The position numbers were made by a program, and so were the translations under genes. From Diadema antillarum (taxonomy: Eukaryota): a DNA stretch of 64,000 nucleotides. Under the pieces are notes generated by a model that was not told the origin of the DNA, did not search any database, and was given only the letters and a program-made list of their open reading frames with translations. Where the stretch lies: positions 806,001 to 870,000 of the forward strand of contig NW_027270915.1 of the NCBI RefSeq assembly GCF_040938485.1. Direction: 5' to 3'. This document shows positions 4,617-57,800 of the stretch, piece after piece. Position 1 is the first letter of the stretch, and each line of letters starts with the position of its first letter.

Positions 4617-4942
4617 ATGGGTTGGAAAACACCAGCCGTCATTCTCCTAGTCGCGATCCTCGTCTGGTATGGAATCTCTTGTTTATTAAACCCGAATTTG
4701 ATCAGCGAAACCCCCGATGCTGGGAGCGGATGGTGGGGTCCTGGCCCCGAAGTCCCCGGGAGCAAGCAGGACACGTCCGTACGTCCGTTCCGCCTTACCG
4801 TGTCTAATGATATTCTCTCAGATCTGAATAGGCGATTGAAGAATACACGGTTTATTGACGCCAAATATGAAACGACGTTCCGCTATGGTTCTAATCCGGC
4901 CTATATGAAGGAAGTTCAACAGTATTGGCTCAAAAAGTACAG
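4617..4942 (+). CDS. EPHX1: EPHX1-like A exon 1 (membrane anchor and EHN domain)
   Basis: MGWKTPAVILL...GWWGPG...YWLKKY; donor AG|GTAACT. Confidence 0.95.
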
Positions 4943-6560
4943 GTAACTAAGCACAAAGATTATACCAACAACGAATATAGGGTCCTAACTAACATAACGC
5001 AATTTTGCTATGATATGATTCTCTTGTAAAGATGTTCTATGAATAAAAAGCATGCCAATCTGGAATACCATTTTCTTGAAACATAAATACGAAACATAAT
5101 ATAGCCTCACTTGTGTGAGCAACATGGCTTTAAAAGAAGGAATAGAAACTATAAACAATGAATACAGGAAAACATGTTTTATTATTATTCTTTTTTAATT
5201 GACATCTCGTACAAAAGTATAGGACATATTTAGAGGAAAGTTGGTAGGTTAGCAAAAGAGATATTTGTATTTATGATTATGACCATGGTAGTGACGATGA
5301 TAATTCATTAGAATGAAATTGATAAAACCAATTATACCTCTGTATAAGGATATTAAGCACATGAATATACATGTGTATGAAAAAACTACATACAGGACCG
5401 GATAAAGAAAAATATCATTATAGGGTTTATAATAGTGTGTGTGTATACTTGCTATATGTGCATTTTGAAGACAAATTATGTAAGTAATGTTGAACATGTC
5501 TTAATGTGTTGCACTGCTTTCTGATATTTCGTCTTGTGTGTGTGTGTTGTGTGGGTGTTGGTATTTTTGTCACTCCTCAGCTGGCGAGATGCCGAGAAGA
5601 AACTAAACAAGTTTGACCACTTCCTGACCAACATCGAAGGCATTGATGTACATTTCATCCACTCCAAGCCCAAACTAGCGCCTGGACAGAAGGCTAAACC
5701 TATCATGATGATCCACGGATGGCCGAGCTCCTTCTATGATTTTAACAAGGTGATTTTTAAGTCAATTCATTTGGTGTTGAATACACGTACGATTCGTATA
5801 GGGCAATGTCTCGCACTTGACTCGATCGGTTTCCATAATCTTAGTAAGAAGAAACATTATCTACAATGTGTTATCTCTGCGAATCCAGACCTTGCAATGC
5901 TTTCAGTGTATCGGTTGAAATGTGACACACCCCTTTCGTTTAAAGGGGATCATACCATATTGCGAAATAAGGTCACAAGGATGGTTGATAAATATAGATA
6001 CAGAGTTCGCTATAATACACACATCCTAAAGTTGAATTTACATGAGATAATTAGCCATCGTTTGAGAAAGATGACAGCCCGTCGTCGAAACTATCAAATA
6101 CAACTTTTCGATGTGTCTAGAGAACTCTTTATCCACATCGTACCATAACTAGTTTTGCTTTGGCTGAGATGGAGATTCATGTTTTAACTAGAGAACTAGA
6201 AACCATAATGAAATATTAAAAAGCGTACAATTCAAACATGAATTCAAAGTATATTTGAGAGATAGCGGTTTTGTAATAGCCGAGATATCCAAAGACAAAG
6301 CAAAGCAAAATGGTCATGATCCAAAGGTGGGTCCTACCTATGGATAGCTTGACCATTTCAAAACCGATTTTCATCAAATAAACTTTGGATTCCTCGTTGA
6401 AGTGTAAGCTATTCACCTAAGTGGTTTCTATTTAGCTCACAAAAATTTAAAACCTCGATTCCCTTCTCAACCAAAACGATATGCCATTTCTTTAAACAAC
6501 GAGTCCACTAGAGACTATATCTTACGCACACACACACACAAACACACACACACATACACA

Positions 6561-6607
<47 letters not shown>

Positions 6608-8164
6608 GCTTTGTCACGTACACATTTCATAAAAATCACTGACATACGTTGCAAAATCTTCATTCTTTTTTTTGTGGGGGGGGGGGCAAACATGTCTCAA
6701 AGTTGAATAGAACCCGACAGGTGTATATTTCATGTATATTATATGATTATAGCAACTGATTGACAAAATGCCCTACATCCTGCTCGAGTAAGTACATCCA
6801 TGATTTGTTTATTATGGCTCTTGCTAAAACACTGATCAATTCTATGCTTATTTATGTCGATGTAGAGCAATTTGTCAATCAGTTGCAATGAAAACACCTC
6901 GACGGAAGAATTTCATAAATTTGAATATTATGATTACACATGTATAATCTTCTTTCATAAGCGTTGTGTGTATGTTGTCAATTACAGTTTCATGTCAAGC
7001 ATGATTATGTGAAGTTTCACGCACCTTTTGCTTTTGTACGCTATCTGCCTTGTTGAGTAAAATGGTAGAAGATATTACACAAAATAGTTTTCAAAGCTTT
7101 GATTACTTTTGCCCTTTGTTTCTTTATTAACTTAAACATTTTACAACTGTGCAAACAACCCCTAACATTTCTTTTATACTGGAACCGTCATGATATAAAA
7201 ATTGTCTGTAGTTAAAGCTTTTAATTTTTGTGTGTGCTTTGTTTCGTTTTAATGTTTGGAAATACTCAAGATCTCTATAGTGAGCAAAGATCGAGTTCAG
7301 TGAGTCTAATGACTCTATAGGTAAACATTTTGTTGTTTGTCTGGGCTAGACTCAGCGATAAGAAAATGTCAAATGTAAGATACATGCAAAATGTATGTGT
7401 ACATAATTATATACGTGGTTAAGCATGATACACTTATTGACTCGTATGAATGTTTAAACATGAAGATTTTTATTGCAAAATGAGCTATTCGTCATTTCAA
7501 AACATTGCAAAGTCGGCCCAAGTCCATTTATCAGATAGAGCAAAATTCAACCTTTCCAGTAATATCTCACATGTAGCTTAACAAGGACTATTCTAGTAAA
7601 GATTAAAAATATTCTGTATTTTCTTTGTTTATTAGCAGCTTTAATCACAAATGTCTCAACAAGGAGTTAACTCGTTTTACGATAAAACTCTTTATATATA
7701 TATATATATATATGAAGAGTTTGTTTGCAAAAACCGATAAGTCCATATTTGTCAAATAGAGATATTTGCGATTAAAGGTCAAGAAAATATTGTGGAATAC
7801 ATTGGAATGCCTTGCATGGCAATAAAGTATGTATGGCTAGCAAAGTAGAATATAGTAACGGATCATTGAAAAAAGAGAGATATCTGAGATTAAACTAGGT
7901 GAGAGACTACAAGAAGAAAATAAGAAAGTAAAGGATATCTCAATCATAACTTTAAGAATATTTATTGTCAGGCACCAAAATATTGAGCTTTCTCTGGAAA
8001 GGTTTTATTTTCGTTCTAATTTGGAGTGACTTAAGGGATCACTCGAAGATTTTGGAATGATCTCTGATGTCACTCGAAAATCAGTCATGTCAGTGAAAAT
8101 GAACATTGTTTGGAGTGATCCCTGAGGTCACTCGAATATGAGTGAAATTAAACATTTTCACTCG

Positions 8165-8195
<31 letters not shown>

Positions 8196-9519
8196 TATAT
8201 GTGTATATATATACATATATATTTATATATGTATATATATATATATATTCATATGATTTTTTATTATCTTTTTTTTTTTAGAGAGAGAGAGGGGGGGGAG
8301 AATCCACGTACTGGTGTTTACACATTTATTGTCAAGAGAACAGCAGTAAATGTTTTTCTTTTCGCCCAAAATAAAGTGAAAATGATTAATCAGCAACAAA
8401 TTTATCATCTGCTTTCCTCTTGGCAAACATGTGGATTATTATATACATATGGTTACATGATATTTCTTTTTACTCTCCATAAAATGTATGTATATAATAT
8501 TCATTTCAGTTTTTTTTCTTTTTCTTATTTCCTATATATTCACAGATTATCCCTATGTTGTCAGACCCACTCAACCACGGAGGCTCGGCTGAGGACGTAT
8601 TTGAAGTCATATGTCCCAGTATTCCAGGGTATGGTTTCTCGGAACCGCCGCATAAGCAAGGTATTTTCAATCAATTTTGAATGAAGAGATTTAAATTCTG
8701 AATAACTATTATTCCCGTTTTTTCTCTTTTTTTTGGACAAAATTGAAAAAAAGAAGAAGATAAATTTACTGCAAAAAGTGGCACTTCATGAGCTATTGCA
8801 AGCACAAATTACGAATAGTATTTGTTTGTAGATGAGATATGGGCATAAGGATTGGACATAAACTTAACTATCAAAGTGTAGTTTGTATATATTTACATGA
8901 CTCCAAATAATCTATATATAATCCATTATTATAGCAGTGAGTTTGCCTGCATGATCACATTCGTAAGATTTCTATCTTTTGGTATTGAGTCATTTCGGTT
9001 TTTTGTTTTTTGTTGGTTTGTTTCTCTGTTTGTTTTTGCTCAATCCCTTTGTCCCTCTGTTTGTAAACGTTGTGTTATCTCTTTCTGTCTATCTATACAT
9101 ACAGAAATATACACATTACGAATATCTATGCGTATTTCATATTATAATAGCTGAGTATGCTGAACGGGTTGCATGTATAATTCTACTGGGAAAAAGAACT
9201 TTGCATGTTATATGAATAGGCCTGTATACACATTCATACTATGAAACAATAGGTCTATTATGCGCACAAACATAATACATGTAGATATCTCCAGAGGTGT
9301 ATATCTTCATAATATGTACATTTTGTAAACATGACTTGTATAACGAATGTGTGATGTTTGTGAATGGCATGAATGTTTGAATAGTACTGTATATACTAAG
9401 TATTAAAGGGGATTTCGATCAAAATGATACCGTTGAACTCGTAATATTTTACTCTTATCAGACTAACTTATATTTTGACTGGATTTTTTCTTTGAACGAT
9501 GAAAACAAATCCGTGACAA

Positions 9520-9558
<39 letters not shown>

Positions 9559-12500
9559 GGATAACCAATAAGTCCAAAAACTTTATATCTGCGCAGGTCA
9601 TTCAATAATGTTCTTCTTTATATATTGATAGGATATCAGTGAAATGTGAAACATTCTTCTGCCAAGTGTTTAATATAGACCCGTGTACTGCTGTATAATT
9701 CCAAGGTTATATCAATGAAATATATCATGGTGACGAGTTGGACACTTAGGATATATGAAATATTTATACTCTGCCTCCCTCTGCTTTATTTCTGATGAAT
9801 TGCATCTTTCTTTCAATAGGTATCCATGAAATATACTATGGTGACGAGTTGGACAGCTTCTTAGAATAGATGAAATAGTTACTGTGCCTCAGACCGCCTA
9901 ATTTCTGATGAATTTTTTTTTTTTTTTGACAGGATTTACATCTGTAGATGCAGCTCGCATCTTTGACAAGTTGATGATGCGTCTTGGGTTCAAGGAGTAT
10001 TATCTCCAGGGAGGCGACATGGGAATGATGATTGGTATCAACATGGCCGTTATGTTTCCTAGGTAACTAATTTTACACGGTTTCTGAATTTTTTCTCTTT
10101 TTTCTCCGTTTTGCCTTCGTGGTCACATGTCATATCCCAGAGAGCCAAGATTAACATTTGCTTGATTACCCATCATCGAAGTGACGTTACTTTATTGCAA
10201 TCATCTATTTATCATTTTATCACTACACAAAAAGTATGACATGGCATTTCAATGAAGTTATAATATTCCATATTGAGGTAGACCAGTTCTACAGTTATCA
10301 AAGGTCAGGGGTCGTCTTTCTAAGACAGCTGTAAATGTTTTTCGATATGTGATATTGATTTTACTTACTTTTCCTTAAATATTTTGCAAAACTGTTGGAA
10401 ATTTTCTAGTGACCATGCTATGAGTATACTGGATCAAGCGTTAGGGAGAAACTTTGTAGATAAGCAGCTTCAGTAGTGAAGCATGCGATTGAGTGGGATA
10501 TGAAGTCGTTGAAAACGTTATGGAGACACAAATTGCCTCCCAAAGGTCGTGCGTCTCCATAATAAAGTAATCATACATACATACAGTATAGGGCCTGTAT
10601 ATAATTATGTATATTGATTGCAGCATGGTCAGAGTTAAGGTTAACAGGTTAAAGGTCATATACAAGGTCATTCATACATACAGATACGTGTATCCATACC
10701 GTATTGAATATCAAAGTAAATCAAGAAGCTCGATTTTTCTGTAAAGATCATCACAAATGTTACGTGATTCACGCCCTCTGTGTCATATTTACAGCCATGT
10801 CAAAGGTCTCCATAACAACGATGTCCTCCAGGTGAGTGGGATGGCGTTGGTCTACCCATTTGTAGCCAATATCTGGCCGTCTTTCTTCCTCCCCGACGAG
10901 AGGGAGCAGAAGGCCTTACTTCCTCCGGGAGAACGCCTCCTCTTCGTCCTTGAGGAGTCCGGCGTCTTCTACCAGCATGCAACAAAACCGGACTCCGTCG
11001 GTGAGTCCTCTTCACTTTCAAGCCTTAATGACGAGGTTCCGTGACGTCAAATGACGCGTTGTTTGAGGAGCAAAACTAACACTTGTGTAGGGCCTATCAA
11101 GCGCATTGCTCATTACATAGCGCGCGATACGCGTATACCGCATACCACCGGATACCCACCTGCCTATCATAAACGTGAGATTGAACGCTTTCATACGCGC
11201 TTGCCCTCGCGCATGGCTTGATGACGTCATTGGAATCTCGTCTTTTAAACCATGTGACCGTCCTGTAGCCAAAGATAATCCTGGAACAGTGAATTAAAAA
11301 AAAAAAATCAGCAGTAACACCACTGGAGATAGATCAGGGGGGTGTTTCATCAACGAGTTCGTCGGAGGTTTTCACCGACAAATTTGAAAAGCTACTGAAA
11401 TCCTTGCGTCTGATTGGCTGATTGCAAATTTGTCGGTGAAAACCTCCGACGAACTCGTTGATGAAACGCCCCCCAGAGGTTATCACTTATTGCTGGTTTC
11501 ATTCCTGTGAGTTTATTCCTCATTCCCTACAGCTGCGGCTCTCCAAGATTCTCCCATGGGGCTGGCGTCGTACATCCTGGAAAAATATTCCGGATGGTCC
11601 AACAGAAATTGGCGGGACCTGCCCGATGGCGGACTGACCAAGGAATGGACACTGGACGAACTCTTGACCAATGTGATGATCTACTGGGTCAACAACAGTA
11701 TTGGAAATACGCTGCGAATGTTGAAAGAGGACGTGTTACAATTCAGTAGTAACTACATAAATACGTAAGTATTCTGTTTCCTGTCTATTCTTAGATGGCT
11801 AGGAGTATCAAAATATATGTGATCAGAATAATTGAAGAGCTTGCAACCAAAAGGCGCTAAATCCATTGAAAAATGATGGATATAGCGCCTTTTGGAAGCA
11901 AGCTCTTTCCAACCATGTAAAGGAGAAATGCAGATTATCGTTTGGGGGAATTTGGATAATAGCATGAAGATATTCAGAAAAAATGCAAATATTGCCCTTT
12001 TTGAAAAGTATGCATTGATATGCAGAACCGAAGCGAGAAGAGCACAAAATGCATCTTACACCATTAAATTCTGTATGCTTATGAGAAAATAAAGTACAAA
12101 AGATGTTTGTTTATCCGAAAATCAAACAAGCTTCGTTATTCTAAAGGTTCGTTCTATTCGAGAATTACAAATTCCCTGATATAGCCTACGACATGTGCGT
12201 TAAGCCGAAAACAAAAGATTGTTTGTTTAGTATTTGTGGCGTCATTCCGAAGGTTCGTTATTTTGAAGTTTATCAAATAGAAAATAAAATAAGTCTCGTA
12301 TATCCACCAACGAATCTTCGGAATTACGAACCCTATTTCATTTTCGGATTAACGAATCGTCGTATGAACGGACGTTATTTCATTTTCGGGTTAATAAATC
12401 GACGGAATAATGAACCTCATTTCATTTTAGGCTTAACAAACCTTTGGAATAACGAACCGTCGGAACATCGAACTGTATTAACAGGCGGTTTAATACAGTT

Positions 12501-13126
12501 CGATATTCCGACGGTACGTTATTCCAAAGATTTGTTAGTGGGCCCACATCCTTGATTGACAACACCTTCTAGCAAATCACACATAGTCAATATATCATAT
12601 AATTTGTCTTATGTTTTTGTTTTGTTTTGTTTTGTTTTGTTATGTTTCTTTTTTTGTTGGTTTTCTGTCCATGTCTACACTTTGTACCTTAAAAATCAAT
12701 TATTTTGTGAATACTCGTACATAAGGGGGCTTACTTTACAAGGCATTTTTTGGCTTTATTCGAGTTCTCTTTTTTTTTTCATTTTCACAGATATTTATGC
12801 AAAATGATTGATTATCTTTTTGTTCTGTATCGTAAAATTCAATACAGTTGTATTGTTTTATCAGAAAATGAGATGTATAAACCAATGAATTGAATTGAAT
12901 TATGACTTGGCCATCCCGTCACAGGCATTCCACTAGCGTTCCATACGGGCATACCGTTGCGCCCGAGGACTTCCTCGGGTCGGCTGAATGGCTGATGAAG
13001 CCGTTCCACCCTGGACTCATTCATTTCACCTACCTGCCCAAAGGGGGCCACTTTCCCGCCTTCCAGGTGCCCGAGCTGCTGGCGAAGGATGTGCGGGAGT
13101 TCGTTCGGAAGGTGGAAGCCCTCTAG
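4617..13126 (+). CDS. EPHX1: Microsomal epoxide hydrolase-like paralog A (7 coding exons, 459 aa), non-canonical active site
   Basis: Exons 4617-4942, 5581-5749, 8546-8660, 9933-10062, 10795-11000, 11533-11764 and 12925-13126 sum to 1380 nt, all GT-AG and in frame. Shows an N-terminal TM anchor, GWWGPG, HGWP, SIPGYGFS, QGGD, TKPD and GGHF. Confidence 0.95.
5581..5749 (+). CDS. EPHX1: EPHX1-like A exon 2
   Basis: WRDAEKKLNKFDHFLTNIEGIDVHFIH...HGWPSSFYDFNK; 169 nt. Confidence 0.95.
8546..8660 (+). CDS. EPHX1: EPHX1-like A exon 3
   Basis: IIPMLSDPLNHGGSAEDVFEVICPSIPGYGFSEPPHKQ; 115 nt. Confidence 0.95.
9706..9932 (+). repeat. Tandem duplication (114 + 113 bp) of the 3' end of intron 3 of A
   Basis: Both units contain atgaaatat...atggtgacgagttggaca...atttctgatgaatt, then a pyrimidine tract and AG. 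Confidence 0.8.
9933..10062 (+). CDS. EPHX1: EPHX1-like A exon 4 (nucleophile Asp codon 10016-10018)
   Basis: FTSVDAARIFDKLMMRLGFKEYYLQGGDMGMMIGINMAVMFP; 130 nt. Confidence 0.95.
10795..11000 (+). CDS. EPHX1: EPHX1-like A exon 5
   Basis: HVKGLHNNDVLQ...EESGVFYQHATKPDSV; 206 nt. Confidence 0.95.
11337..11474. mobile_element. Palindromic MITE (50-bp arms, 38-bp spacer) in intron 5 of A
   Basis: ggggggtgtttcatcaacgagttcgtcggaggttttcaccgacaaatttg is mirrored at 11425-11474 with one mismatch. Confidence 0.75.
11533..11764 (+). CDS. EPHX1: EPHX1-like A exon 6
   Basis: ALQDSPMGLASYILEKYSGW...LLTNVMIYWVNNSIGNTLRMLKED; 232 nt. Confidence 0.95.
12433..12537. repeat. Near-perfect hairpin formed by two facing transposon-like ends, preceded by ~50-bp subrepeats (about 12310-12470)
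   Basis: ...ggaataacgaaccgtcggaacatcgaactgtattaa / caggcggt / ttaatacagttcgatattccgacggtacgttattcc... Confidence 0.7.
12925..13126 (+). CDS. EPHX1: EPHX1-like A exon 7 (acid Asp 12968-12970, His 13049-13051, stop TAG)
   Basis: HSTSVPYGHTVAPEDFLGSAEW...KGGHFPAFQVPELLAKDVREFVRKVEAL*; 202 nt. Confidence 0.95.
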
Positions 13127-42000: not shown

Positions 42001-44594
42001 ACAATATCCTATCACTATTTATAACTTTTCCACCATCTTCACTATCATCATTCAAGCTGTCTGGATCTGATAGGCACAGTCATAAGGCTGAGTGGCTCTT
42101 CCACTGCTTCTGATTTGGTGCCAGCTGTAGCTTCAATCTGATTGGACAGAAGTTGGTATCCCTGAGCAATAGACCACACCTTGTTTGTGGGGGGCTTCAG
42201 AGAAACCGTATCCAGGGATGCTTGGGCAGATAACCTCAAAGATGTCATCAGCCGTCCCACCATGGCTCAGGGGGTCCGTCAGCATAGGTAGAATCTGAAA
42301 AACAAAAAGGAAGTAGGGATGTAGGTATGATAACTCAGGGCAGTCAACATCTGCAGTGAAAAAAGTAAAAGGGAAAAATACTGATGTGCAGGGTAAAGAA
42401 ATTTGGAAGGCAAAAGTCATATCTTTGACAAAAATGGGATGGTTGCACAAAATGTGTACTGTATGTCAAATCAAATGTCAGAAAATAAAGAACATTATTG
42501 TTAATTAACAAATCATCAAAACATACATCACAAATGCTGATATCCAGCCTTGAATGCAATCCATTCACAAGAAAACAATACATTACTCACAATTCAAACA
42601 CATTTCACGGATAATGTAAAACTATACAGATACATTCGGGGCATGAAACCTTTATGAAATGGAGCCAACGGCCTTTTTCGCGATAGGAAACTTTTGCAAA
42701 TTGCCACTGCCATTCAATGCATATTGGGCGCAGAGAAACACTTTTGTGTGCATTTTGTGAATCTTGGCTCCTTGCAAAATTTGCGGAAGTTTCATGCCCA
42801 CCAAAATTTCTGGTTTTTCAATATTGTATGCATATACTTCATATTACTCCCAAAGGCAACAATGTGAGCTAATGAAAGTGGACGGTTAAGTAGGATACTT
42901 TGTGGGTATGTATGTGGCCTTTTCAGGGCCACATATGTAAACCCAAGAAAGAAAATGCGGTGCACCGTTAAGCCTTCTACCACCAATGTTCAACTGCCAC
43001 GGAAGCCTTCAAAGATTTTACCTTGTAGAACTCGTAGACTGATCCAGGCCAGCCATGGACAATGATGAGGGGTTTAGCCTTCTGTCCAGGCTTCAGTTTA
43101 GGCTTCACATGGAGGAAGTGTACATCGATGCCCTCTATGTTGGTCAAGAACTGGTCATACTGATTTAACGTTCTCTCAGCATCTCGCCAGCTAAGGGAAG
43201 AGTCAAAAATAAGAATCAAAAATTCAAAAATGTTTAGTGAATTTACATGAAAGACTTTCTTAACCTGATGAAGATTCTTATCTGTTTCAACATATCACAA
43301 AATGATTAATCCCTAGTATAAAAAGAACTAAGTATAAGGTGTGCACATCTAAAAAACAAACATACAACTAAAATCAATAGATGTATTGTAATTGTATGTT
43401 ACACTTGAAAATCATTGAGTCGTTGACACTGCACCATCCCGCAGGCAGAACTTCTGACATTTATTCTGCAACAAGACAGAATGCTAGTGCTGGCACAGAA
43501 CCTTTTCAGTGGATGTGAGAGGAGTATTTGTTAGGTTGCTTGTTTTGTTTTACATTTCTTTAGATGGTATCACAACTGAAATACTCTATCAACTGGCAGA
43601 CAACATCATAATGGCATGCACATCATGTTCTTTGCTTGTTTTGATGGGATGCTGGATAATTGATTTTCAAAATGTCATTAGAACCACTGAGAAGTTGTAT
43701 TAAAATTGCCATATGTAGGTCCTAATTCAATAGCATCAACAATCTGTTTTCAATATCATTATTATAAAGCAAAAGTGTATATAATTTTAACATGCATCTC
43801 TGTATTTCACTTGTTAGATGAATTATCAAAATTACTTATATTACTATGGTAGGGTTAGGATTCTTCATTCACATTATATATTCATATTATCAACAAGTCC
43901 TCATATTTTTGTTCTCAGACCCATAAACAATTCAAGCTTGATGAGAAGCACCTTAAAGAAAACAAGCAAAGTTTCATCCACACTCTTTCATGTGTGTGTG
44001 CAAGTGCATTTTTTTTCTTTCATTTTAAAGATTTACCTGAGCCTGAGCATGAGGGGATGTTCTTATCTTATATCTGACTTCTTATTGTCATTAGGTAATC
44101 AACAGCACAGCATTGTCAGGGGCCATGGATCAGACTTTGAAGTGAGAATGGGACCATGTGAAAGGAATTGTTATTAATGTTAAAAGGTTTGCTCCCCACC
44201 TAGCTATAGCAGATCGTCTGGACTCTGGGGAATGGGCCACGCCCACCGACCACAATGCTTCTCACCTGTATTTCTCGAGCCAATATCTCTGCACCTGCTT
44301 CATGAAGTCTGAATTGAAGCCATAATGGAAGGCCGAGTCCTCAAGCCGATCGACAAATCGTGTTTTTTCCAGTCGCTCCTTCAGATCTGCCAATACTTCA
44401 TCAGACACGTTGATACGAAACGGACGAACGGACGTGTCTTGTTCCTTCCCCGCCACTTCGGGCAGACCACGACCCCACCACCCGCTGCCAACATCGGGGG
44501 GTTCAGTGAGCAGGCTTGGAAAGAGCACAAATGAAATCAAATAGCCGCACACGACCGCCAGGATTAAAATGACAATAGGTGTTTTCCAGCCCAT
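35916..44594 (-). CDS. EPHX1: Microsomal epoxide hydrolase paralog C (7 coding exons, 460 aa), canonical active site
   Basis: Exons 44266-44594, 43022-43190, 42180-42294, 40465-40594, 39198-39403, 37579-37810 and 35916-36117 sum to 1383 nt. Shows HGWPGS, GGDWG, ETGYMHIQATKPD, SSMRLYKE and GGHFAAFEEP. Confidence 0.96.
36816..36900. mobile_element. piggyBac-type 85-bp MITE in intron 6 of C
   Basis: TTAA|CCCGTTGAGGA ... TCCTCAATGGG|TTAA. Confidence 0.8.
37579..37810 (-). CDS. EPHX1: EPHX1-like C exon 6 (second Tyr codon 37620-37622)
   Basis: QGVTDSPVGLAAYIMEKFSTW...IASSMRLYKEEIG; 232 nt. Confidence 0.95.
38845..39140. repeat. ~300-bp (ATT/ATC)n microsatellite in intron 5 of C
   Basis: Visible trinucleotide run; it produces the spurious poly-Ile ORFs. 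Confidence 0.95.
39198..39403 (-). CDS. EPHX1: EPHX1-like C exon 5 (first Tyr codon 39232-39234)
   Basis: NVKGIHTNMAV...QETGYMHIQATKPDTV; 206 nt. Confidence 0.95.
39448..39615. mobile_element. Tigger-like MITE remnant in intron 4 of C
   Basis: tacagtgtactcctgttataac ... gctataatgggagttcattgta imperfect inverted ends with TA flanks. Confidence 0.45.
40465..40594 (-). CDS. EPHX1: EPHX1-like C exon 4
   Basis: FTVSQAARVFHKLMTRLGFEKYYVQGGDWGAAITYNMALIFP; 130 nt. Confidence 0.95.
40937..41300 (-). mobile_element. Full-length tRNA-derived SINE with a (CAA)n tail, in intron 3 of C
   Basis: The minus strand reads GGGCGGTGAGTTGGCTCAGTCGGTAGCGCG (A box) ... GGGTTCGAACCCG (B box), then a ~250-bp body and a (CAA)n tail. 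Confidence 0.85.
42180..42294 (-). CDS. EPHX1: EPHX1-like C exon 3
   Basis: ILPMLTDPLSHGGTADDIFEVICPSIPGYGFSEAPHKQ; 115 nt. Confidence 0.95.
43022..43190 (-). CDS. EPHX1: EPHX1-like C exon 2
   Basis: WRDAERTLNQYDQF...HGWPGSVYEFYK; 169 nt. Confidence 0.95.
44266..44594 (-). CDS. EPHX1: EPHX1-like C exon 1
   Basis: MGWKTPIVIL...LEDSAFHYGFNSDFM...YWLEKY; 329 nt. Confidence 0.95.
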
Positions 44595-48618: not shown

Positions 48619-48820
48619 TTAAAGTGCTTCCACCTTTCTAACGAACTGTCGGATGTCATCCGCTAGGAGGCGTGGCTCTTCAAAGGCAGCAAAATGCCCC
48701 CCACGGGGCATGATGGTGTAACTGATGAGGTTGGGGTTGGCCTCCTTCAAGGCCCACTCGGCTGCATGGGTGAGGTCGTGAGGAAAATCAGCGTAGGCGT
48801 ATGGGACCATGTTTGCATAG
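48619..48820 (-). CDS. EPHX1: EPHX1-like D exon 7
   Basis: YANMVPYAYADFPHDLTH...RGGHFAAFEEPRLLADDIRQFVRKVEAL*; 202 nt. Confidence 0.95.
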
Positions 48821-51800
48821 CTACAGAGAAAGAGACAGATGACAAATTGGATGAATTATTTGTGTATTTTACACTCCCACTTATAAAGGGCATAGACAGC
48901 TGGTTTTGGGAGTGCTCCCGAATAATTCTGAATTCTTAGAAAAACAGAAGACAATCTGGCCCTGGAATGCTCTAAAGTTTAATCTTGAACAGGCCTGCTT
49001 TTTGTCTTTGCTAAATTGGGGGGGGGGGGGGGAGGGGGGAGGGGGGAGGGAGGGCTGGGCTGATTCTCTTTTTCCCCTTGTTTTTTGCAATGGAAATTGT
49101 CACTTATCACTTTTCTACCATAATTAACATAAAATCAATCAATCAATCAATCAAACTGATGGATATTATACATAGTCAGGTTTTTATGAGTTTCATGACA
49201 GCTAGAGCACTGTTTTTTATAGGAAATATGTTCACTAAATCACAAAATGCAAAGGGGATACAGTGTACATGTATCGCTTGACCGCTTTTGTACAGGTGGA
49301 TCAGCAGCCTGTCTGTTCTCTGCCAATGGCTTAATCTCGCTGCGGGAGGGGGGGGGGGGGGAGTTTCATAAGTTCATCAGAGAATTTAGGTAGGAAAGGG
49401 TGAAGCTAAATGCCTCGGAACATAATGGTTCAAGTAAAGCTGACAACAGGTGGTGAAAAAGACCCCAAAAGTGGTAGACCACAGCCAACATACCACGTGA
49501 ACTTCCACTATTCAAAACAAAGCACTCACCTATATTCATATTTCTCTGAGGATCCCCCCAGTTCTTCTTTGTAAAGACGCATGGACGATGCAATGTTCCC
49601 ATTGACCCAGTAGATCATCACATTGGTCAAGAGCTCATCCAGCGTCCAGATCTTGGTCAGTCCACCGTCCGGCAGGTCTCGCCACTCTTTGTTGGTCCAA
49701 GTTGAGAACTTTTCCATGATGTATGCGGCAAGTCCGACGGGAGAGTCATTCACACCTTGCCCTAAACATCAACATGATCAAATGACTTCATTTTGGAAAC
49801 CGTTTCTCTCAAAGTCAACTCACAAAGATGTAGTTTATTTTTACACTGAAAGATAAATTAACTATGCAACTGTGATGACAATACAGTGAAATCAAATCGT
49901 AAATACCAATCTTTTGTAATTTGACCATGTATCACAACAAATACATGTGCAAGAAGTCGTAATTTTACCCTATTTCATGTAAGCACTCAAAATCAGTGAA
50001 ATGGCTCAACCTAGAACTTTTTTTCTTTTTTTTTTAAATGATAATTTCTGAAAGACCAGCTCTGCCTTTATACAATTGTTAATTTTGGGATCCCTGTTAG
50101 AATGAGTGTGAAATTGATAATTTTTTCCCCTTTTCTTCAACACTGAGAAACAGAAAAAAGCTAAAGGAACAAAAAAGCGGAATCAGCATATATGAGGATC
50201 TTACTGACACAAATCGTGCACTTCTCTGGGATGCCTTCGCTGAAATGAAAAGACCAAATACAAAGGTCCTGTCAGCTTGGACCATTGATGGCAGGATCAT
50301 CATTTCCATGAGGGCATCAAATGGGAAAACAATCACAAAAAGAATCTACAGCAAGATTGACTTGCAAAAGCTCTGAAGATCCACCAACATATGAAGTGAT
50401 TAATAGATTATTGATTCTATGTAAACTGGGTTCTGCTGATTGATTTCATATGTCTGACAACATAAAGGATCCGAACTTCAATACTACCACTCATATCTCA
50501 CAAGTTTAGTGTCTAATGAAATAATTGAAAGGTGTTTTCTCCTGGTGTTTCTTTGCTCTTGATTACAATTAAAATACGATCTAGGTTTATGCAATCTTAA
50601 TTTTTGCATTGTTTTTCCTTTGTTTTTCCCTCAACTTGCCAATAGTGTGATAGTTATTTCAACCACTCTGTAGTTATGTCTGTGTGTATTTTCGTTAATG
50701 TCAATATCTGTGCCTCTCAGGTAAAACGTGTGTCGGCTTTGAAGTTTTTAGGATTAATACTTGATGAAAATGTTACCTGGAATGCTCATGTAAATTACCT
50801 TTGTAATGTGTTGAATATTGGTGCTATGTATTTAAAGTCAATACCTAAAGTGTTTTTAAAAATGATTTATAATTCAATTTACCACATTTGTCATACGGGA
50901 TCATAATTTGGGGCAATGCATCAAAAATCCAGTTGAACAGAGTTTGTGTCTTACAAAAACGTGCAATACGTATTGTACACCATGTTTCATATCTTGCCCA
51001 TTCAAAATCAATCTTTCATTTGTATAAGATGCTGCAATTTTGTGATATTTATCTTTTACAGTTGGGTATTTTTATGTATTTTTGTTACAAAAAGTTCCTT
51101 CCAGAATCCCTTTTAGACACACTCTTCACATTCAACTCTAATATGTTTTGGAAGGATCATACTATTCCATGTAAAGGTGCCACAGTATTAATCATAACTA
51201 GTATTTACTTAATGCATGCAAAATTTCAGATTAATGCAATGATCACAGCAGTATAACCTTCCATTCCACATCCCTTCATTGCATAGAGCAGCACTGGGTA
51301 AGATAACACCTTTCTATCTGGTATAGGTACTTTACATTATCTATGAGTTTGGAAAGTCAATTTATATTATGCTTTATGTAATCCTAAAGCTCAAAGTGTG
51401 CTCTTTCAGAATTTGCCCTTCAGCGAAAATCCACGTCTGGCAACTTCTAGATCCAAGATGGTTTTGAGATGCAGGGTCACACATTTAACCTGCTATCAAA
51501 GGATGAGCTGCTTTTGCTACATAACATGCATTTCCCTTAGACACCTGCCCACATATACTAAGGACTAGCCTTCAACAGGCTAATAATATTCCAGTGCTCT
51601 TCACTGACCAGCAGTGTCCGGCTTGGTGGCCTGGATGTGCATGTATCCGCTCTCTTGGAGGGCAAAGAAGAATAGTGAACTGAATGGAAGAAACCGGTCC
51701 TGATCCTCTTTCTTTGGCATTAGCAGAGACGGGCAGAACCCAGCAACAATGGGATAAATGAGGCCCTTAAAGTTGGACAGAGTCGCCATGTTGTTGTGGA

Positions 51801-54800
51801 CACCTTTAACATGGCTGAGAAATGCGAGGCAACAAAAGAGAGACAACTATCAAAAAGCAAGAAGAATGATGATCATCAAAGGTGAGAAGTGAGACCTCAA
51901 GTGAGATAGTCATATATATAAAAAAAATTACTAAAACTTAGAGCATATTATATACCATTTGCAGATGAAACAAACACCCGGCTTTACTGCTTCAAAAAAG
52001 TTCTAAAAGGAGAGTTATATGGATAGGAAAAAAAAACAATGTAAAAATCTTAATCAGTATAATCAGTAAGTATTATTGAATATACAAATGTAAACAATAT
52101 AATAATTATAATAAAATTGTTTCTAGAATAAACCATCTCCAGTTGATGACTTATCAATAATAATGTTATCTCCTAAATAATTGAGGCATAATTGCAGAAT
52201 TTTTATATGGTAGGAGGTTTTGTGATACAACTGACCTACATAAGTACATCAAATGCGATAACTTGGACAATTTCTAAATCACTGCTCCAAATGATAAACA
52301 ATAAAGTCTGTCAACACAGTACCAATATCAATTACTTGAAGATCATTGGGGATACATACTCAGGGAACATGATGGCCATATTTCGAGTGATAAGACTTCC
52401 CCAGTCGCCCCCTTGGACGTAGTACTTCTTAAACCCAAGACGACCCATCAGTTTGTGGAAGACTCTTCCCGCTTTGGATGCAGAGAAACCTGGGTTGGTT
52501 TGAGGAGAATGAGAAGACCAAATCAGCACTGCATTGCTCTTTTATCTACAGGGTCGTAGATGAAACATACCTATAAATATGATCCATGTTTAACCACATA
52601 TGATGACATACGACTTTCCAGGGTTATGTTTCCTTAAATATGTAAGCATCCATTCTCCATACCCCTGTAGGAAAAAAACCAACAATAACATACAAGCTCA
52701 CCATTCAATAAAACTAGTAACTTTTACAAGTAATGGTAAAACTTTGTAATCAGTGGTAAATATTAACAATTTCTTGGCTTTGTTATGCTATGCCTTATGG
52801 GTGTGGCTATGGAAGTTACACTTGATCGTAAAGTTACCAGAGTTTTATGTGATGGTCCCATGGTCATTCCCTATTCCATGTGCACTTTTGACATGGAAGC
52901 ACTTTCTCAAAACTCAAAACAGAGAACCACAACTTATACACAATGTCCTGTCTCTCCTTCACTTGATATTAAAGTGAACTCACCTATTTTTTTTTTAATG
53001 CAATTTGGTAAATCTGAAGTGACATACAGCAAAAATTCAAAATTGAAAGCATTTACGTTTTGATACAAAAGTCCTCTGATAAACCAGCTGAAAGACATGA
53101 AATATTGCCATAATTACATTCAATGAATAAAAATCCCAAGATTTCAATTTCCTTATTAACACTCAATTTTTGAACGAATATAGTATTGCTTGGAGAAACT
53201 TATGAAATTACTAGTGAGAACCTGATCCAATTTGAATCTCTCTGTGCAAATTATACAAACTGGCTAACTTCCTGATTGGACAGAAGTTGGTATCCCTGAG
53301 CAACAGACCACACCTTGTTTGTGGGGGGCTTCTGAGAAGCCATATCCTGGGATACTTGGGCAGATAACCTCAAAGATGTCATCAGCCGTCCCACCATGGC
53401 TAAGGGGGTCCGTCAGCATTGGTAGCATCTGAAAAATACAACCATTCATTCCATGTTTGCAATTCAATGTGAAGCATGAAATCAAGTCAAATCAAACATG
53501 TAATCTAGCTACCCATTTTACTTGACACAGGTCTCTTTAAAATTAACATCATATCTGCAGCAGCCTCTTGGTTTTATGGTACAGAAAGATTGCAGAAAAT
53601 AAAATTCCACTACTTCTAGGTTCAAGATCCAGTGGTTTCCTGAAAAATAAAAATGTGATAAAAAGTGTATAATTTGACTGTGATGACCTCCTAACACATG
53701 TGCCTAGAAAAGGGATATGACTGCATACATGTGTGCAAATCGGTTCTGTAAATGTAGCCTCTTTCTGAGACTCCACAAGTAAAAATCATGCTTAATGTGC
53801 CTACGTTTTTTTTTTTTTTTAATATCAGACAATGTGTTATATTGTTTACTGTGTGTATTTGCCACTATGGTGTCACATTTTAATGAAGATAATGGCCTGA
53901 AAATAAGTTCCATGTGTATTGTTCTATATGCAATATTTGCTATTACATGAGTATGGGATTACTTATTTTTGTTATGATTTGTGAACAGAAATGACAGAAA
54001 AAGCAACAAATAAGACAATAAAGAAACAAGCACACAAAAACTCAAACAAACAAACAAACAAACAAAAAACAAACAAACTATCAAACAAAACACCTGCCCA
54101 ACTGCCAATGTAACATGGTACTGTGGAGCTAGGGACTGGTCTATCAATGATTATGATAATATTACTGGTATCAGATTTGATTTTGATTTGATTTGATTTT
54201 ATACATAATAATATTTTATACATAATAATCATACATATAAATGGATATGTACATGAACATTAGTTGCTAACAAAATGAGGTTTTTTTCATTACTTTTAGA
54301 ATATACAGCAATACATTTCTTCATTTGCCTGTACAATGTCCAACAGAACAGTGATGCAATGAATAACGCAGAAGGGCTACAGCTTAAGCATTGCTCGATT
54401 TGCATGCAGCCCTCGTACATAATACATAACATATAGGAAAATAGGGGGAGGGATGACTTGCATAGAGATAGGATAGGAGAAAGGAGAGAGGAGAGGTCTG
54501 TCTGCTTTCACTAATACACAAAGTTAGATCACCTGGATCACTGAATAGTAAAGCATGGCAAAGTAATTTCTCACCGAGGTACAGGTGAACAGTTACAGGT
54601 CATGGTCGGTTACATAACATTATGCAACAAGGAAATGTAGAAATTACGCGGTGCGTAATATATGTCCCCGCCGGAAGTAGCATTTAGTAGCAAAATGTAC
54701 AATATAGGTAAAAAGATCAAGGTCAAAGGTCAAAGAAGTCAAAGGTCAAAATTCTATGTAGAAGTTTTGAAGCCCTCACCTAGTGCCATCATTTAAAGCA

Positions 54801-57800
54801 AACGGAATCGAAATCGGGTTAGAAATGGCGAAGGAGTAGCATTTTGTAGCCAATGTACAATAAAGGTAAAAAATCAAGATCAAAGGTCAAAGAAGTCAAA
54901 GGTCAAAATTCTGTGTAGAAGTTTTGAAGCCCTCACCTAGTGCCATCACATAAAGGAAACGGAATCGAAATCGGGTTAGAAATGGCAAAGGAGTAGCATT
55001 TGGTAGCAAAATGTACAATACAGGTCAAAATCAAGGTCAGAGGTCAAAGAAGTCAAAGGTCAAAATTCTGTGTAGAAGTTTTGAAGCCCTCACCTAGTGC
55101 CATCACTTAAAGCAAACGGAATTGAAATCGGGTTACAAATGACGAAGGAGTAGCATTTTGTAGCAAAATGTACAATATAGGTAAAAAATCAAGGTCAAAG
55201 GTCAAAGAAGTCAAAGGTCAAAATTCTGTGTAGAAGTTTTGAAGCCCTCACCTAGTGCCATCACATAGAGCAAACGGAATCGAAATCGGGTTAGAAATGG
55301 CGAAGGAGTAGCATTTTGTAGGCAATGTACAATACAGGTCAAAAATCAAGGTCAAAGGTCAAAGAAGTCAAAGGTCAAAATTCTGTGTAGAAGTTTTGAA
55401 GCCCTCACCTAGTGCCATCATATAAAGCAAACGGAATCAAAATTGGGTTGGAAATGGCGAAGGAGTAGCATTTTGAAGCAAAATGTACAATATAGGTCAA
55501 AGGTCAAGGTCAAAGGTCACAACTGAAATTCTGTATAGAAGTTTCACAGCTCCCATGTAGTGCTATCATATAAAGCAAACAGAATCAAAATCGGGTTAGA
55601 AATGGCGAAGGAGTAGCATTTTGAACATTTTGATCACACACGGACGCACGGACAGACGGACAGACGGACAGACGGACAGACGGACACACACACGTACGGA
55701 GCCTGTTTCATAGTCCCCTGCTCGAACTCGTTCGGCGGGGACAATAAATTCAGACCAACGATAATTCCATGAGGGAATTTCATACACAATACAATTGCAC
55801 TGACATTTTAAGATCACTGATATCCAGAGAGCAGCATTGTCTTTACAGCTTTCTTGAAAGAATACATAGACTTTAAAGTTCGAATTTCTGAAGGAAGAGA
55901 GTTCCAAATATCAGGTCCAGTGTGTCTGATAGATTTCAGAGCCATCACCGTTTTTAGGATTTTGTAGATGAAATTTATCAGATTGCCTTGTGGGATAAGA
56001 ATGTATATCCTTGTTTAAATGAAATAATGAGAAAAAAGAAGATGGCAACTGACCGTTACACAAACGAAACATAAAAAGTGAATTTTGCAAAAAATTAATA
56101 TCATTTACCTTTAGTGTTTTTAATTCTACGAACAAAGGATCTGAATGGTCCCGATAACCTGAATTGGTGCATATACGTATAGCTTTCTTTTGTAGAAGCA
56201 ATATACTGTCAATGTGACATCTTTCCCCATCGCTTATTCAAGCAAACATGAGACCGAGTTTGCTTTTCACTCCACTTTATGTACGGTACATAATAGCCTT
56301 GTAGCTGGAGGAATCATGCTATAGGTTTTCATAGGATATAATGTGCCGACCCCCCCCCCCCCAAAAAAAAAAAAAAAAAAAAAATGCAAAAGATAAGCAT
56401 CTGTGGGTTAAGCAATTAATGGCAGCAATTGCAACTGGAATCTCAATGGGGACCAACTGGAACCAGTAAACACCCATTGAATTCAATGGGAACCAATTAA
56501 AACCAATTGAGACCAATTGAATTTTCAATTGGGATTCAACTGGATTTTCGTCCTGGGTTAACTTTTATGAAATGACTAACTCATGAATGCACTTCTTGTG
56601 TTGATGGATTACACCCTTAACGATAAGAGTTTGTGGTAGACCTGCTGGTACATGGCTGTACTTTGCTGCCTTAGAGAGGGAACAGTGTTTGTGCAAACAT
56701 TAGGAAGATATGGTGTCTGTCTAGACGAAATGTTCTATCTGCAATCACCAACTCATGACGGACCTGAACAACATCCTTTCCGTTTTGACCTGGTAAAGGT
56801 CACAAAGTGCATGGACGTGCTCCTTTGTTTGGTACATATCATCCCTGTTCTCACTCTAACTCAGAAGATTTAAAGACAGGGGCCACGGAACAGGCAGGGG
56901 AGAAGGCTGCAGCCCCCAGTCCCACTTTTTTTTTTTTTTTTTGCTAAAAAAAGAAAAACAAACAAACGATTAAACAAAGCACACAAAACAAAACAAAAAT
57001 ATAAAGAAAGAAAACAGATCACAAAACCCATGAATTTCCAAAGGTTCCATGCACAGATCCTTCCTGTCCCCTCCTCCCAAGGAAGGTAACTTTGACCTCG
57101 GTTTTCCCCTTTTCTCCAGTCATCCCCACCCCCCTTCCCCCCGAGGAAAACAAAAAACAAAACTAAGCAACCCCCCCCCCCAAAAAAAAAAACCCTGAAA
57201 GGGAAAGTCTACATCTGGATGTTATGTTGCTGCTGTGTAAACATAGAGATATCTGATAAGTTCATCAGTGAAAAGTTAGGAAGGAAACCTAATGCATGAA
57301 AAAAAAATTATGAACTGTGAAATTTGATAGAGTAAATTGGTGAAGTATTTAGATACGGGTATCCTGTAAATACCATATTTTTTTCTCCTCAATTTGGGTT
57401 ACTGTCTCACGAGGAAATCTTGCAAAAACATCTGCATGCTGAAGGGCTTTCAACCATTAACTGTATAATAACATGGATACCTTGTAGAACTCGTAGACTG
57501 ATCCAGGCCAGCCATGGACAATGATGAGGGGTTTAGCCTTCTGTCCAGGCTTTAGTTTAGGCTTCACATGGAGGAAGTGTACATCAATGCCCTCTATGTT
57601 GGTCAAGAACTGGTCATACTGATTTAGCGTTTTCTCAGCATCCCGCCAGCTATGACATAAAGTAAGAAATGACAAAAAAGAAAAGAAAAGAAAAATACAA
57701 GAGTGACATTTGAAAGATAGATGTAGAGCTCTTATATATTTTCCACTTTCTTTAGAATCTTGAAAAATTAGTCCCAAACACTCTACAACTTGATTCCTTG

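What the first reader, a model, noticed from the sequence alone, without database searches (positions are those of the whole stretch)
10796..10822. A and B gained an Asp at the post-beta6 site that dehalogenases use for the catalytic acid
Seen: A reads PSHVKGLHNND (Asp codon 10820-10822) and B reads PSHVKGLHSND (26261-26263). C and D have Met here (VKGIHTNM, VKGVHNNM), like human VKGLHLNM. Established, from remembered sequences: counting ten residues from the residue that opens this motif (Pro in mEH) gives Glu132 of haloalkane dehalogenase LinB (RVQGIAYME), Asp134 of fluoroacetate dehalogenase (RLSKLAVLD) and the catalytic Glu of Renilla luciferase. Inference: with the tyrosine loss, A/B may have converged on a dehalogenase-like layout with two candidate acids (post-beta6 and post-beta7). 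An ER-anchored animal dehalogenase would be plausible for a marine grazer exposed to halogenated algal metabolites, but that is speculative and the register comes from an ungapped hand alignment.
Basis: partly seen in the sequence, partly recalled or inferred. Interest (0 to 1): 0.75.

Follow-up and report, generated by a model that had tools for sequence, protein, structure and literature searches.

The report
Conserved extra Asp in urchin mEH paralogs
Two of four tandem microsomal epoxide hydrolase genes of the sea urchin Diadema antillarum belong to an old urchin-only branch that put an aspartate beside the catalytic histidine, at the spot where some related enzymes keep their catalytic acid. 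Nothing else makes them look like dehalogenases.

Summary
Genes A and B have GAT (Asp256) at 10820-10822 and 26261-26263, 24 residues after the nucleophile Asp232. Genes C and D have ATG (Met257) there. My hand-built gene models equal the RefSeq proteins of Diadema antillarum.

The Asp is not special to A and B. It is fixed in all 8 proteins (two are isoforms or older versions of others), from 5 species, of an echinoid-only mEH clade (Diadema, Lytechinus, Strongylocentrotus). It is absent from about 225 other mEH-family proteins, which have M, L, F, I or V.

The site is the alternative acid site. It lies two residues after strand beta6 in a high-confidence model. LinB, both fluoroacetate dehalogenases, Renilla luciferase and the epoxide hydrolase Cif all place their acid at nucleophile+24.

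The dehalogenase reading is not supported. The usual post-beta7 acid is kept, HGWP is kept, and the halide-binding Trp after the nucleophile is Met or Val in most of the clade. The first tyrosine is lost only in Diadema.

The Asp travels with H306Y, Y379F/L and E440Q. My best reading is a remodelled mEH-derived hydrolase with a second carboxylate next to the catalytic His. The His-Asp distance could not be measured here.

The parts
4617..13126 (+). Gene A, an EPHX1-like divergent paralog of 459 aa. Exons: 4617-4942, 5581-5749, 8546-8660, 9933-10062, 10795-11000, 11533-11764, 12925-13126.
   Evidence: Hand-built GT/AG model, identical to RefSeq XP_071478189.1 = P0250. Pfam EHN plus Abhydrolase_1.
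10820..10822 (+). GAT = Asp256 of A (nucleophile+24, post-beta6). This is the residue of the finding.
10016..10021 (+). A: nucleophile Asp232 (GAC) followed by Met233 (ATG), in a GGDMG elbow.
10964..10972 (+). A: Val304 (Tyr299 equivalent lost) and Tyr306 (an otherwise near-invariant His replaced by Tyr).
11721..11723 (+). A: Leu379 (Tyr374 equivalent lost).
12968..12970 (+). A: Asp408, the usual post-beta7 charge-relay acid, retained.
13049..13066 (+). A: catalytic His435 (13049-13051) in GGHFPAFQVP. Gln440 (13064-13066) replaces a near-invariant Glu.
20352..29042 (+). Gene B, an EPHX1-like divergent paralog of 459 aa. Exons: 20352-20677, 21747-21915, 23411-23525, 24204-24333, 26236-26441, 27381-27612, 28841-29042. 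The N runs 23080-23223 and 26526-27028 lie in introns and were left alone.
   Evidence: Model identical to XP_071478180.1 = P0216.
26261..26263 (+). GAT = Asp256 of B (nucleophile+24).
   Evidence: The AlphaFold2 model puts beta6 at 249-254.
24287..24292 (+). B: nucleophile Asp232 followed by Trp233 (GGDWG).
28884..28886 (+). B: Asp408, the post-beta7 acid, retained.
28965..28967 (+). B: catalytic His435.
35916..44594 (-). Gene C, a canonical EPHX1-like gene of 460 aa. Met257 is ATG at 39378-39376. Both tyrosines, His307 and Glu441 are present.
   Evidence: One residue differs from P0108, 'epoxide hydrolase 1-like [Diadema antillarum]'.
48619..59164 (-). Gene D, a canonical EPHX1-like gene of 460 aa. 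Met257 is ATG at 51789-51787.
   Evidence: 96.5% identical to D. setosum P0116.

Best explanation
Shown: A and B are intact genes under purifying selection. They code for ER-anchored proteins of the microsomal epoxide hydrolase family and belong to an echinoid-specific paralog clade.

On the stem of that clade the hydrophobic residue at nucleophile+24 (Met in the canonical copies) became Asp, and it has stayed Asp in every member found. The same stem changed three near-invariant positions: H306Y, Y379F/L (the Tyr374 equivalent) and E440Q. Changes of A437P and, in most members, W233M/V came with them.

The covalent machinery is kept: the HGWP oxyanion motif, nucleophile Asp232, His435 and the post-beta7 acid at position 408 (Asp in Diadema, Glu in the camarodonts).

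Inferred: nucleophile+24 ends strand beta6, directly under the catalytic histidine. HLD-II dehalogenases, fluoroacetate dehalogenases, Renilla luciferase and Cif all hold their charge-relay acid there. Asp256 therefore most likely puts a second carboxylate next to His435. It would act as an auxiliary or alternative charge-relay acid that retunes the water-activating, hydrolytic half-reaction, in an active site whose substrate-polarising tyrosine pair has been rebuilt.

The enzyme would remain an Asp-His covalent hydrolase derived from mEH, with altered substrate or kinetics. It would not be a dehalogenase.
For: Gene models equal RefSeq. dN/dS between A and B is 0.175. Pfam EHN plus Abhydrolase_1. 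The clade has 100/100 support and sits inside a 100/100 echinoid mEH clade, and both clade types occur in Diadema and in camarodonts. Asp is found in 8 of 8 clade proteins and neither D nor E in about 225 others. Co-substitutions at near-invariant sites: elsewhere His is 223/227, Tyr 225/227 and Glu 218/227. The post-beta7 acid is D or E in all clade members. The AlphaFold2 model of B has pLDDT 94.1, beta6 at 249-254 and Asp256 two residues later. HMMER aligns B without a gap to AncHLD2 from the elbow through beta6. The nucleophile+24 rule in the literature: LinB 108/132, FAcD 110/134 and 104/128; in DhlA (nucleophile Asp124), N148D or N148E rescues D260N; RLuc 120/144; Cif Glu153, and Cfl1 123/147. 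FAcD shows that an Asp, not only a Glu, can serve at this site.
Against: No coordinates were available, so the Asp256-His435 distance and the side-chain direction were not measured. In the Cif-like enzyme Cfl1 the Asp at this same site points away from the His and is not the H-bond partner. The usual acid is retained, so a second acid is not required. Two carboxylates beside one His may be unfavourable. There are no activity or expression data; no RNA run was listed. The comparison set is mostly deuterostomes and arthropods, not all mEH-like proteins.
Confidence: 0.42

Rival explanations
1. One reading: A and B have converged on a dehalogenase-like layout and hydrolyse carbon-halogen bonds of algal metabolites, with Asp256 as the catalytic acid.
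For: Asp256 is at the acid site of HLD-II and FAcD enzymes. The epoxide-polarising Tyr374 equivalent is lost across the clade, and both tyrosines are lost in Diadema. After the mEH-class structures, the best Foldseek matches of the B model are fluoroacetate dehalogenase entries and an isobutylene epoxide hydrolase. An epoxide hydrolase with side dehalogenase activity has been reported in a marine yeast.
Against: The halide-stabilising residues are missing. LinB uses Asn38 (which I take, from memory, to be the X of its HGXP motif) and Trp109. The clade has HGWP, and Met or Val after the nucleophile in 6 of 8 members, including A. The post-beta7 acid is kept, unlike in HLD-II. The camarodont orthologs keep the Tyr299 equivalent. 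The acid site is shared with the true epoxide hydrolase Cif. The FAcD fold match is probably generic to mEH folds; no control with a canonical copy was run. Sea urchins already have a bona fide HLD, DspA.
Confidence: 0.07
2. Asp256 is a substrate-facing residue, either a general acid or H-bond donor or a binding site for a cationic or polar group. It makes up for the lost Tyr374 equivalent and defines a new substrate class, and it does not talk to the His.
For: It appeared on the same branch as Y379F/L and H306Y. The residue sits at the core-cap junction where the active-site cavity begins; this follows from the topology of the fold, with beta6 ending at 254 and the cap helices starting at 262.
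Against: In every relative with an acid at this site that I could document, the acid is assigned to the histidine and not to the substrate. The pocket could not be inspected without coordinates.
Confidence: 0.2
3. Asp256 has no direct catalytic role. It is a structural or compensating change inside a rewired polar network (H306Y, E440Q, A437P) and may point away from the His as Asp147 does in Cfl1. Alternatively the clade has lost efficient catalysis and binds ligands.
For: The Cfl1 precedent. Loss of a negative charge at His+5 (E440Q) on the same branch as the gain of Asp256 fits charge compensation. There are long stem branches of 0.26 and 0.38.
Against: The Asp has been strictly conserved since the Diadema/camarodont split, alongside full conservation of nucleophile, His, acid and HGWP and a dN/dS of 0.175. 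That argues for an active enzyme and for a constrained role of this residue.
Confidence: 0.25

Closest known systems
Canonical microsomal epoxide hydrolase (EPHX1; insect JHEH, PDB 4QLA)
   Same: N-terminal anchor helix, EHN domain, HGWP, GGDxG nucleophile elbow, GGHF histidine and post-beta7 acid. Best sequence and fold match: 4QLA at E 6e-93 and TM-score 0.93 normalised to the target. A and B nest phylogenetically among echinoid mEH genes.
   Different: Asp instead of Met, Leu or Phe at nucleophile+24. The Tyr374 equivalent is lost (both tyrosines in Diadema). An invariant His is replaced by Tyr at 306. Glu is replaced by Gln at His+5. Trp is replaced by Met or Val after the nucleophile in most members.
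Cif-class epoxide hydrolases (Pseudomonas Cif; Burkholderia Cfl1 and Cfl2)
   Same: These epoxide hydrolases carry their charge-relay acid at nucleophile+24 (Cif Glu153; Cfl1 Asp147 with nucleophile Asp123) and have a non-canonical ring-opening pair. Cfl2 (7JQZ) is B's best PDB sequence match outside the mEH class.
   Different: They are soluble bacterial enzymes without an EHN domain. They have no documented second acid after beta7, and they use a His/Tyr pair. They are not phylogenetically close.
HLD-II haloalkane dehalogenases (LinB, DhaA, DbjA), Renilla luciferase and sea urchin DspA
   Same: An Asp nucleophile and His base with the acid at nucleophile+24 after beta6 (LinB 108/132, RLuc 120/144). 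B aligns to them without a gap from the elbow to beta6.
   Different: They use Glu rather than Asp and, from memory, have no acid after beta7. Halide is bound by an Asn (Asn38 in LinB) and by the Trp after the nucleophile. A and B have HGWP, A has Met after the nucleophile, and the N-terminal EHN domain and anchor are absent from HLDs.
Fluoroacetate dehalogenases (RPA1163, Burkholderia FA1)
   Same: An Asp, the same residue type, serves as the acid at nucleophile+24 (110/134 and 104/128). They are the best non-mEH structural matches of the B model.
   Different: Their halide pocket (His155, Trp156, Tyr219) is in the cap and was not found or tested in A and B. They are bacterial, soluble and dimeric.
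DhlA double mutant D260N + N148D/E (engineered move of the acid)
   Same: It shows by experiment that an enzyme with a post-beta7 acid can also be served by an acid at nucleophile+24 (124/148).
   Different: It is an engineered bacterial dehalogenase in which the beta7 acid was removed. A and B carry both acids naturally.

Membership tests
Microsomal epoxide hydrolase family (EPHX1-like, EHN + alpha/beta hydrolase) | EHN N-terminal domain followed by an alpha/beta-hydrolase domain, with an N-terminal membrane anchor | tested here: met
   Pfam PF06441 at E 4e-32 and PF00561 at E 2e-19 on A. Helix 4-24 in the model of B.
Microsomal epoxide hydrolase family (EPHX1-like, EHN + alpha/beta hydrolase) | HGWP oxyanion motif, Asp nucleophile in a GGDxG elbow, catalytic His in GGHF, and an acid after beta7 (human Asp226, Glu404, His431) | tested here: met
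   A and B have H154GWP, Asp232, His435 and Asp408. The human residues are from PMC8331186.
Microsomal epoxide hydrolase family (EPHX1-like, EHN + alpha/beta hydrolase) | Pair of epoxide-polarising tyrosines (human Tyr299 and Tyr374) | tested here: not met
   A has Val304 and Leu379; B has Phe304 and Phe379. The camarodont orthologs keep Tyr304 but have Phe379. In other family members Tyr is 223/227 and 225/227. A and B are therefore members by descent, but epoxide hydrolase activity is not assured.
Microsomal epoxide hydrolase family (EPHX1-like, EHN + alpha/beta hydrolase) | Phylogenetic placement inside the family | tested here: met
   The clade has 100/100 support within a 100/100 echinoid mEH clade.
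Haloalkane dehalogenase, HLD-II layout | Catalytic acid after beta6 at nucleophile+24 | tested here: inconclusive
   An acidic residue is present at the right position. Whether it contacts His435 could not be measured.
Haloalkane dehalogenase, HLD-II layout | Halide-stabilising Trp directly after the nucleophile (LinB Trp109) | tested here: not met
   A has Met233. Across the clade the residue is Met in 4, Val in 2 and Trp in 2 proteins (B-type only). The LinB residues are from PMC6100074.
Haloalkane dehalogenase, HLD-II layout | Second halide-stabilising residue (LinB Asn38, which I place in the HGXP motif from memory) | tested here: not met
   All four genes read HGWP.
Haloalkane dehalogenase, HLD-II layout | Halide release from haloalkanes | not testable with these tools
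   Needs an enzyme assay.
Fluoroacetate dehalogenase | Asp as the acid at nucleophile+24, plus a cap halide pocket (His155, Trp156, Tyr219 in RPA1163) | tested here: inconclusive
   The Asp is present. The cap residues could not be aligned by sequence and no coordinates were available.
Cif-class epoxide hydrolase | Charge-relay acid at nucleophile+24 with a His/Tyr ring-opening pair | tested here: inconclusive
   The acid position matches. The ring-opening pair could not be mapped. By phylogeny and domains (EHN) A and B are not members.

The most novel reading that the evidence does not exclude
An ER-anchored animal enzyme family derived from mEH has taken up the post-beta6 acid site while still holding the post-beta7 acid. 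That would be a natural 'two-acid' intermediate in the migration of the catalytic acid. With its rebuilt tyrosine site, the enzyme would now work on a non-epoxide or otherwise unusual electrophile, possibly halogenated algal metabolites.
Probability: 0.12. Interest if true: 0.75.

Novelty: new variant of a known kind. Interest (0 to 1): 0.5.

Why it matters
In the alpha/beta-hydrolase superfamily the catalytic acid sits after beta7 in some families and after beta6 in others. How evolution moves it is known only from one engineered case, the DhlA mutant D260N + N148D/E.

A natural clade that has carried acids at both sites since before the Diadema/Camarodonta split, under purifying selection, would be a ready-made system to test whether two-acid intermediates work. 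It could also show how an acid next to the histidine tunes the rate-limiting hydrolytic step of mEH-type enzymes.

It also flags that 'epoxide hydrolase 1-like' annotations in sea urchins hide a subfamily whose epoxide-activating site is rebuilt. This matters when these genes are counted as detoxification capacity.

Tried and rejected
1. I first suspected a 7-residue insertion (HNN-DVLQVSG-MALV against human HLN-MALV) that would leave the Met in place. I rejected it because A, B, C and D have equal lengths from HVKG to YP and to KPD.

2. A perfect donor-like CAG|GTGAGT lies right after the Asp codon. I rejected it as a real splice site because the encoded QVS is conserved in the camarodont proteins and the RefSeq models read through it.

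3. The representatives search with exon 5 alone (68 aa) gave only 9 hits, mostly exon-sized fragments and none with Asp.

4. I tried to build full-length profiles from exon references with MAFFT. Alignments A1-A4 and A6-A8 misaligned the fragments. Only exons 2-4 with P0080 (A5) and exons 2-3 with P0108 (A9) were usable.

5. The search with A5 did not list A or B. The search with A9 did, and the cluster look-up gave A an id.

6. No RNA runs were listed, so read laying was not used and expression is untested.

7. Foldseek gives no residue-level map.

8. In the census, the single 'D' outside the clade was P0006, an unrelated 1811-aa protein and not an mEH.

After that, only references and ids were used.

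Full report
WHAT IS IN THE WINDOW

The window holds four intact microsomal epoxide hydrolase (EPHX1-like) genes. Each has seven coding exons with identical intron phases. A (4617-13126) and B (20352-29042) are on the plus strand. C (44594-35916) and D (59164-48619) are on the minus strand.

My hand-built models are confirmed by public annotation. A is identical to P0250 (XP_071478189.1) and B to P0216 (XP_071478180.1). Both are named 'epoxide hydrolase 1-like [Diadema antillarum]'. C differs by one residue from P0108 of the same species. So the window comes from the sea urchin Diadema antillarum.

A carries Pfam EHN plus Abhydrolase_1. The two N runs lie in introns of B and were not touched.

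THE OBSERVATION

Exon 5 of A begins at 10795. With the split codon it reads S-HVKGLHNND, and GAT is at 10820-10822. B reads SHVKGLHSND, with GAT at 26261-26263. C and D read NVKGIHTNM and HVKGVHNNM, with ATG.

The four proteins align without a gap from the nucleophile through this motif. Asp256 of A and B and Met257 of C and D are each exactly 24 residues after the nucleophile, which is Asp232 in A and B and Asp233 in C and D. HMMER also aligns the stretch without a gap to Bombyx JHEH (4QLA), which has Met. Two Streptomyces mEH-class structures have Leu or Phe at or next to this position.

I first suspected a 7-residue insertion, and then a cryptic splice donor (CAG|GTGAGT at 10829-10837). Both were rejected.

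THE ASP IS OLDER THAN A AND B

A cluster look-up and alignment found the same 'NND' in several relatives:
- the D. setosum orthologs of A and B (P0252, P0251);
- Lytechinus variegatus (P0253);
- L. pictus (P0219);
- Strongylocentrotus purpuratus (P0256, XP_030844990.1).

In a maximum-likelihood tree these proteins form a clade with 100/100 support. It sits inside a 100/100 echinoid mEH clade that also holds the canonical copies of Diadema and of camarodonts. The duplication therefore predates the Diadema/Camarodonta split, and the A/B split predates the two Diadema species.

I took a column census of 235 full-length proteins (vertebrates, amphioxus, hemichordates, other echinoderms, arthropods). 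It gives Asp in 8 of 8 clade proteins. Among about 225 other mEH-family proteins there is no Asp or Glu; the counts are Met 136, Leu 33, Phe 31, Ile 9 and Val 8. ATG to GAT needs three base changes. dN/dS between A and B is 0.175. The residue is derived, rare and constrained.

WHAT TRAVELS WITH IT

The same clade differs from nearly all other family members at several positions:
- 306: His in 223/227 elsewhere, Tyr in all clade members.
- 379, the Tyr374 equivalent: Tyr in 225/227 elsewhere, Phe or Leu in the clade.
- 440, which is His+5: Glu in 218/227 elsewhere, Gln in the clade.
- 437: Ala becomes Pro.
- 233, the residue after the nucleophile: Trp in 217/227 elsewhere; in the clade Met in 4, Val in 2, and Trp only in the B-type.

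The Tyr299 equivalent (304) is kept in Lytechinus and Strongylocentrotus and is lost only in Diadema, where A has Val and B has Phe. HGWP, the nucleophile, the catalytic His and the post-beta7 acid (Asp or Glu at 408) are kept in all members. The human reference residues Asp226, Glu404, His431, Tyr299 and Tyr374 are taken from PMC8331186.

IS IT THE ALTERNATIVE ACID SITE?

Yes, as far as sequence and secondary structure can show. An AlphaFold2 model of B, built on a 102-sequence alignment, has pLDDT 94.1 and pTM 0.93. It places beta5 at 226-230, helix C at 232-244 and beta6 at 249-254, so Asp256 lies two residues after beta6.

HMMER aligns B without a gap to an HLD-II protein (AncHLD2) from before the nucleophile through beta6. 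DhaA and DbjA hits keep the same offset at the nucleophile and at the end of the aligned stretch.

- LinB Asp108/Glu132.
- FAcD RPA1163 Asp110/Asp134, and Burkholderia FAcD Asp104/Asp128.
- DhlA Asp124/Asn148, where N148D or N148E rescues D260N (PMC6100074).
- Renilla luciferase Asp120/Glu144 (PMC5413902).

The site is not a dehalogenase hallmark, however. The epoxide hydrolase Cif uses Glu153 there. In the Cif-like Cfl1 the aligned Asp147 (nucleophile Asp123) turns away from the histidine (PMC8244358).

THE DEHALOGENASE READING

It has no support beyond the position of the Asp.
- The halide-binding residues of LinB are Asn38 and Trp109. They are answered here by HGWP and, in A and most of the clade, by Met or Val.
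- The usual post-beta7 acid is retained, so the acid has not moved.
- By domains, sequence and fold the proteins are mEH-class. 4QLA matches at E 6e-93 and TM-score 0.93 normalised to the target. FAcD entries come next, but far behind.
- Sea urchins already have a characterised HLD, DspA.

BEST EXPLANATION

This is an echinoid-specific, neofunctionalised mEH paralog lineage that keeps the covalent Asp-His chemistry. Its active site was rebuilt in one episode: M256D, H306Y, Y379F/L and E440Q.

From the fold topology, and from all documented relatives with an acid at this site, I infer that Asp256 lies next to His435. It would act as a second or alternative charge-relay carboxylate that changes the water-activating step. 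I give this about 0.4.

The rivals are:
- a substrate-facing role (0.2);
- a true dehalogenase-like function (0.07).

WHAT COULD NOT BE DONE

The tools give no coordinates, so the His-Asp distance that would decide between these readings was not measured. No RNA run was listed, so expression is untested. No activity data exist. The comparison set does not cover fungi or bacteria beyond the few solved structures.

NOVELTY AND SCORE

The genes are annotated only as 'epoxide hydrolase 1-like'. I found no paper describing this clade in the library searched. It is a new variant of a known family. It is of moderate interest to enzymologists as a possible natural two-acid intermediate. I score interest at 0.5.

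Noticed in passing
window 10829-10837 (A) and 26270-26278 (B): A perfect splice-donor consensus, CAG|GTGAGT, lies inside exon 5, three codons after the Asp codon, in both genes. It is read through as Q-V-S in the RefSeq proteins, and QVS is conserved in the camarodont orthologs. It is probably not used, but no RNA data could be checked.
   Followed up: partly
window about 24274-24313 (B, exon 4): Where B differs from A in exon 4, it matches C or D at a cluster of sites around the nucleophile elbow (GACTGGGGAGCAG...). This suggests a short gene-conversion tract from a canonical copy that restored Trp233 in the B-type. It is shared with the D. setosum B-type, so it is older than the species split.
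   Followed up: partly
A 10970-10972 and 13064-13066; B 26411-26413 and 28980-28982: His306 to Tyr and Glu440 to Gln are clade-wide changes at positions that are nearly invariant in the rest of the family (223/227 and 218/227). They may be an interacting pair that changed together with the gain of Asp256. Their role in canonical mEH is unknown to me.
   Followed up: partly
P0080 (Ptychodera flava epoxide hydrolase 1-like): This hemichordate mEH also has a GGDMG elbow (Met after the nucleophile) while keeping both tyrosines and Met at nucleophile+24. So Met233 alone is not tied to the A/B-type active site.
   Followed up: no
window 4617-59164: The four genes form a tandem cluster. A and B point rightwards and C and D point leftwards, so B and C are tail to tail. 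A/B have dS 0.36 and C/D have dS 0.64.
   Followed up: partly
window 37752-37750 (C, codon 321): The window reads Thr (ACT) where RefSeq P0108 has Asn. This is probably an allelic or haplotype difference; two accessions or contigs exist for these proteins.
   Followed up: no
window 31008-31628 (minus strand): An ORF of 206 aa lies between B and C and has no Pfam match. The other long ORFs at 26337-27121 run across an N run and are artefacts.
   Followed up: partly
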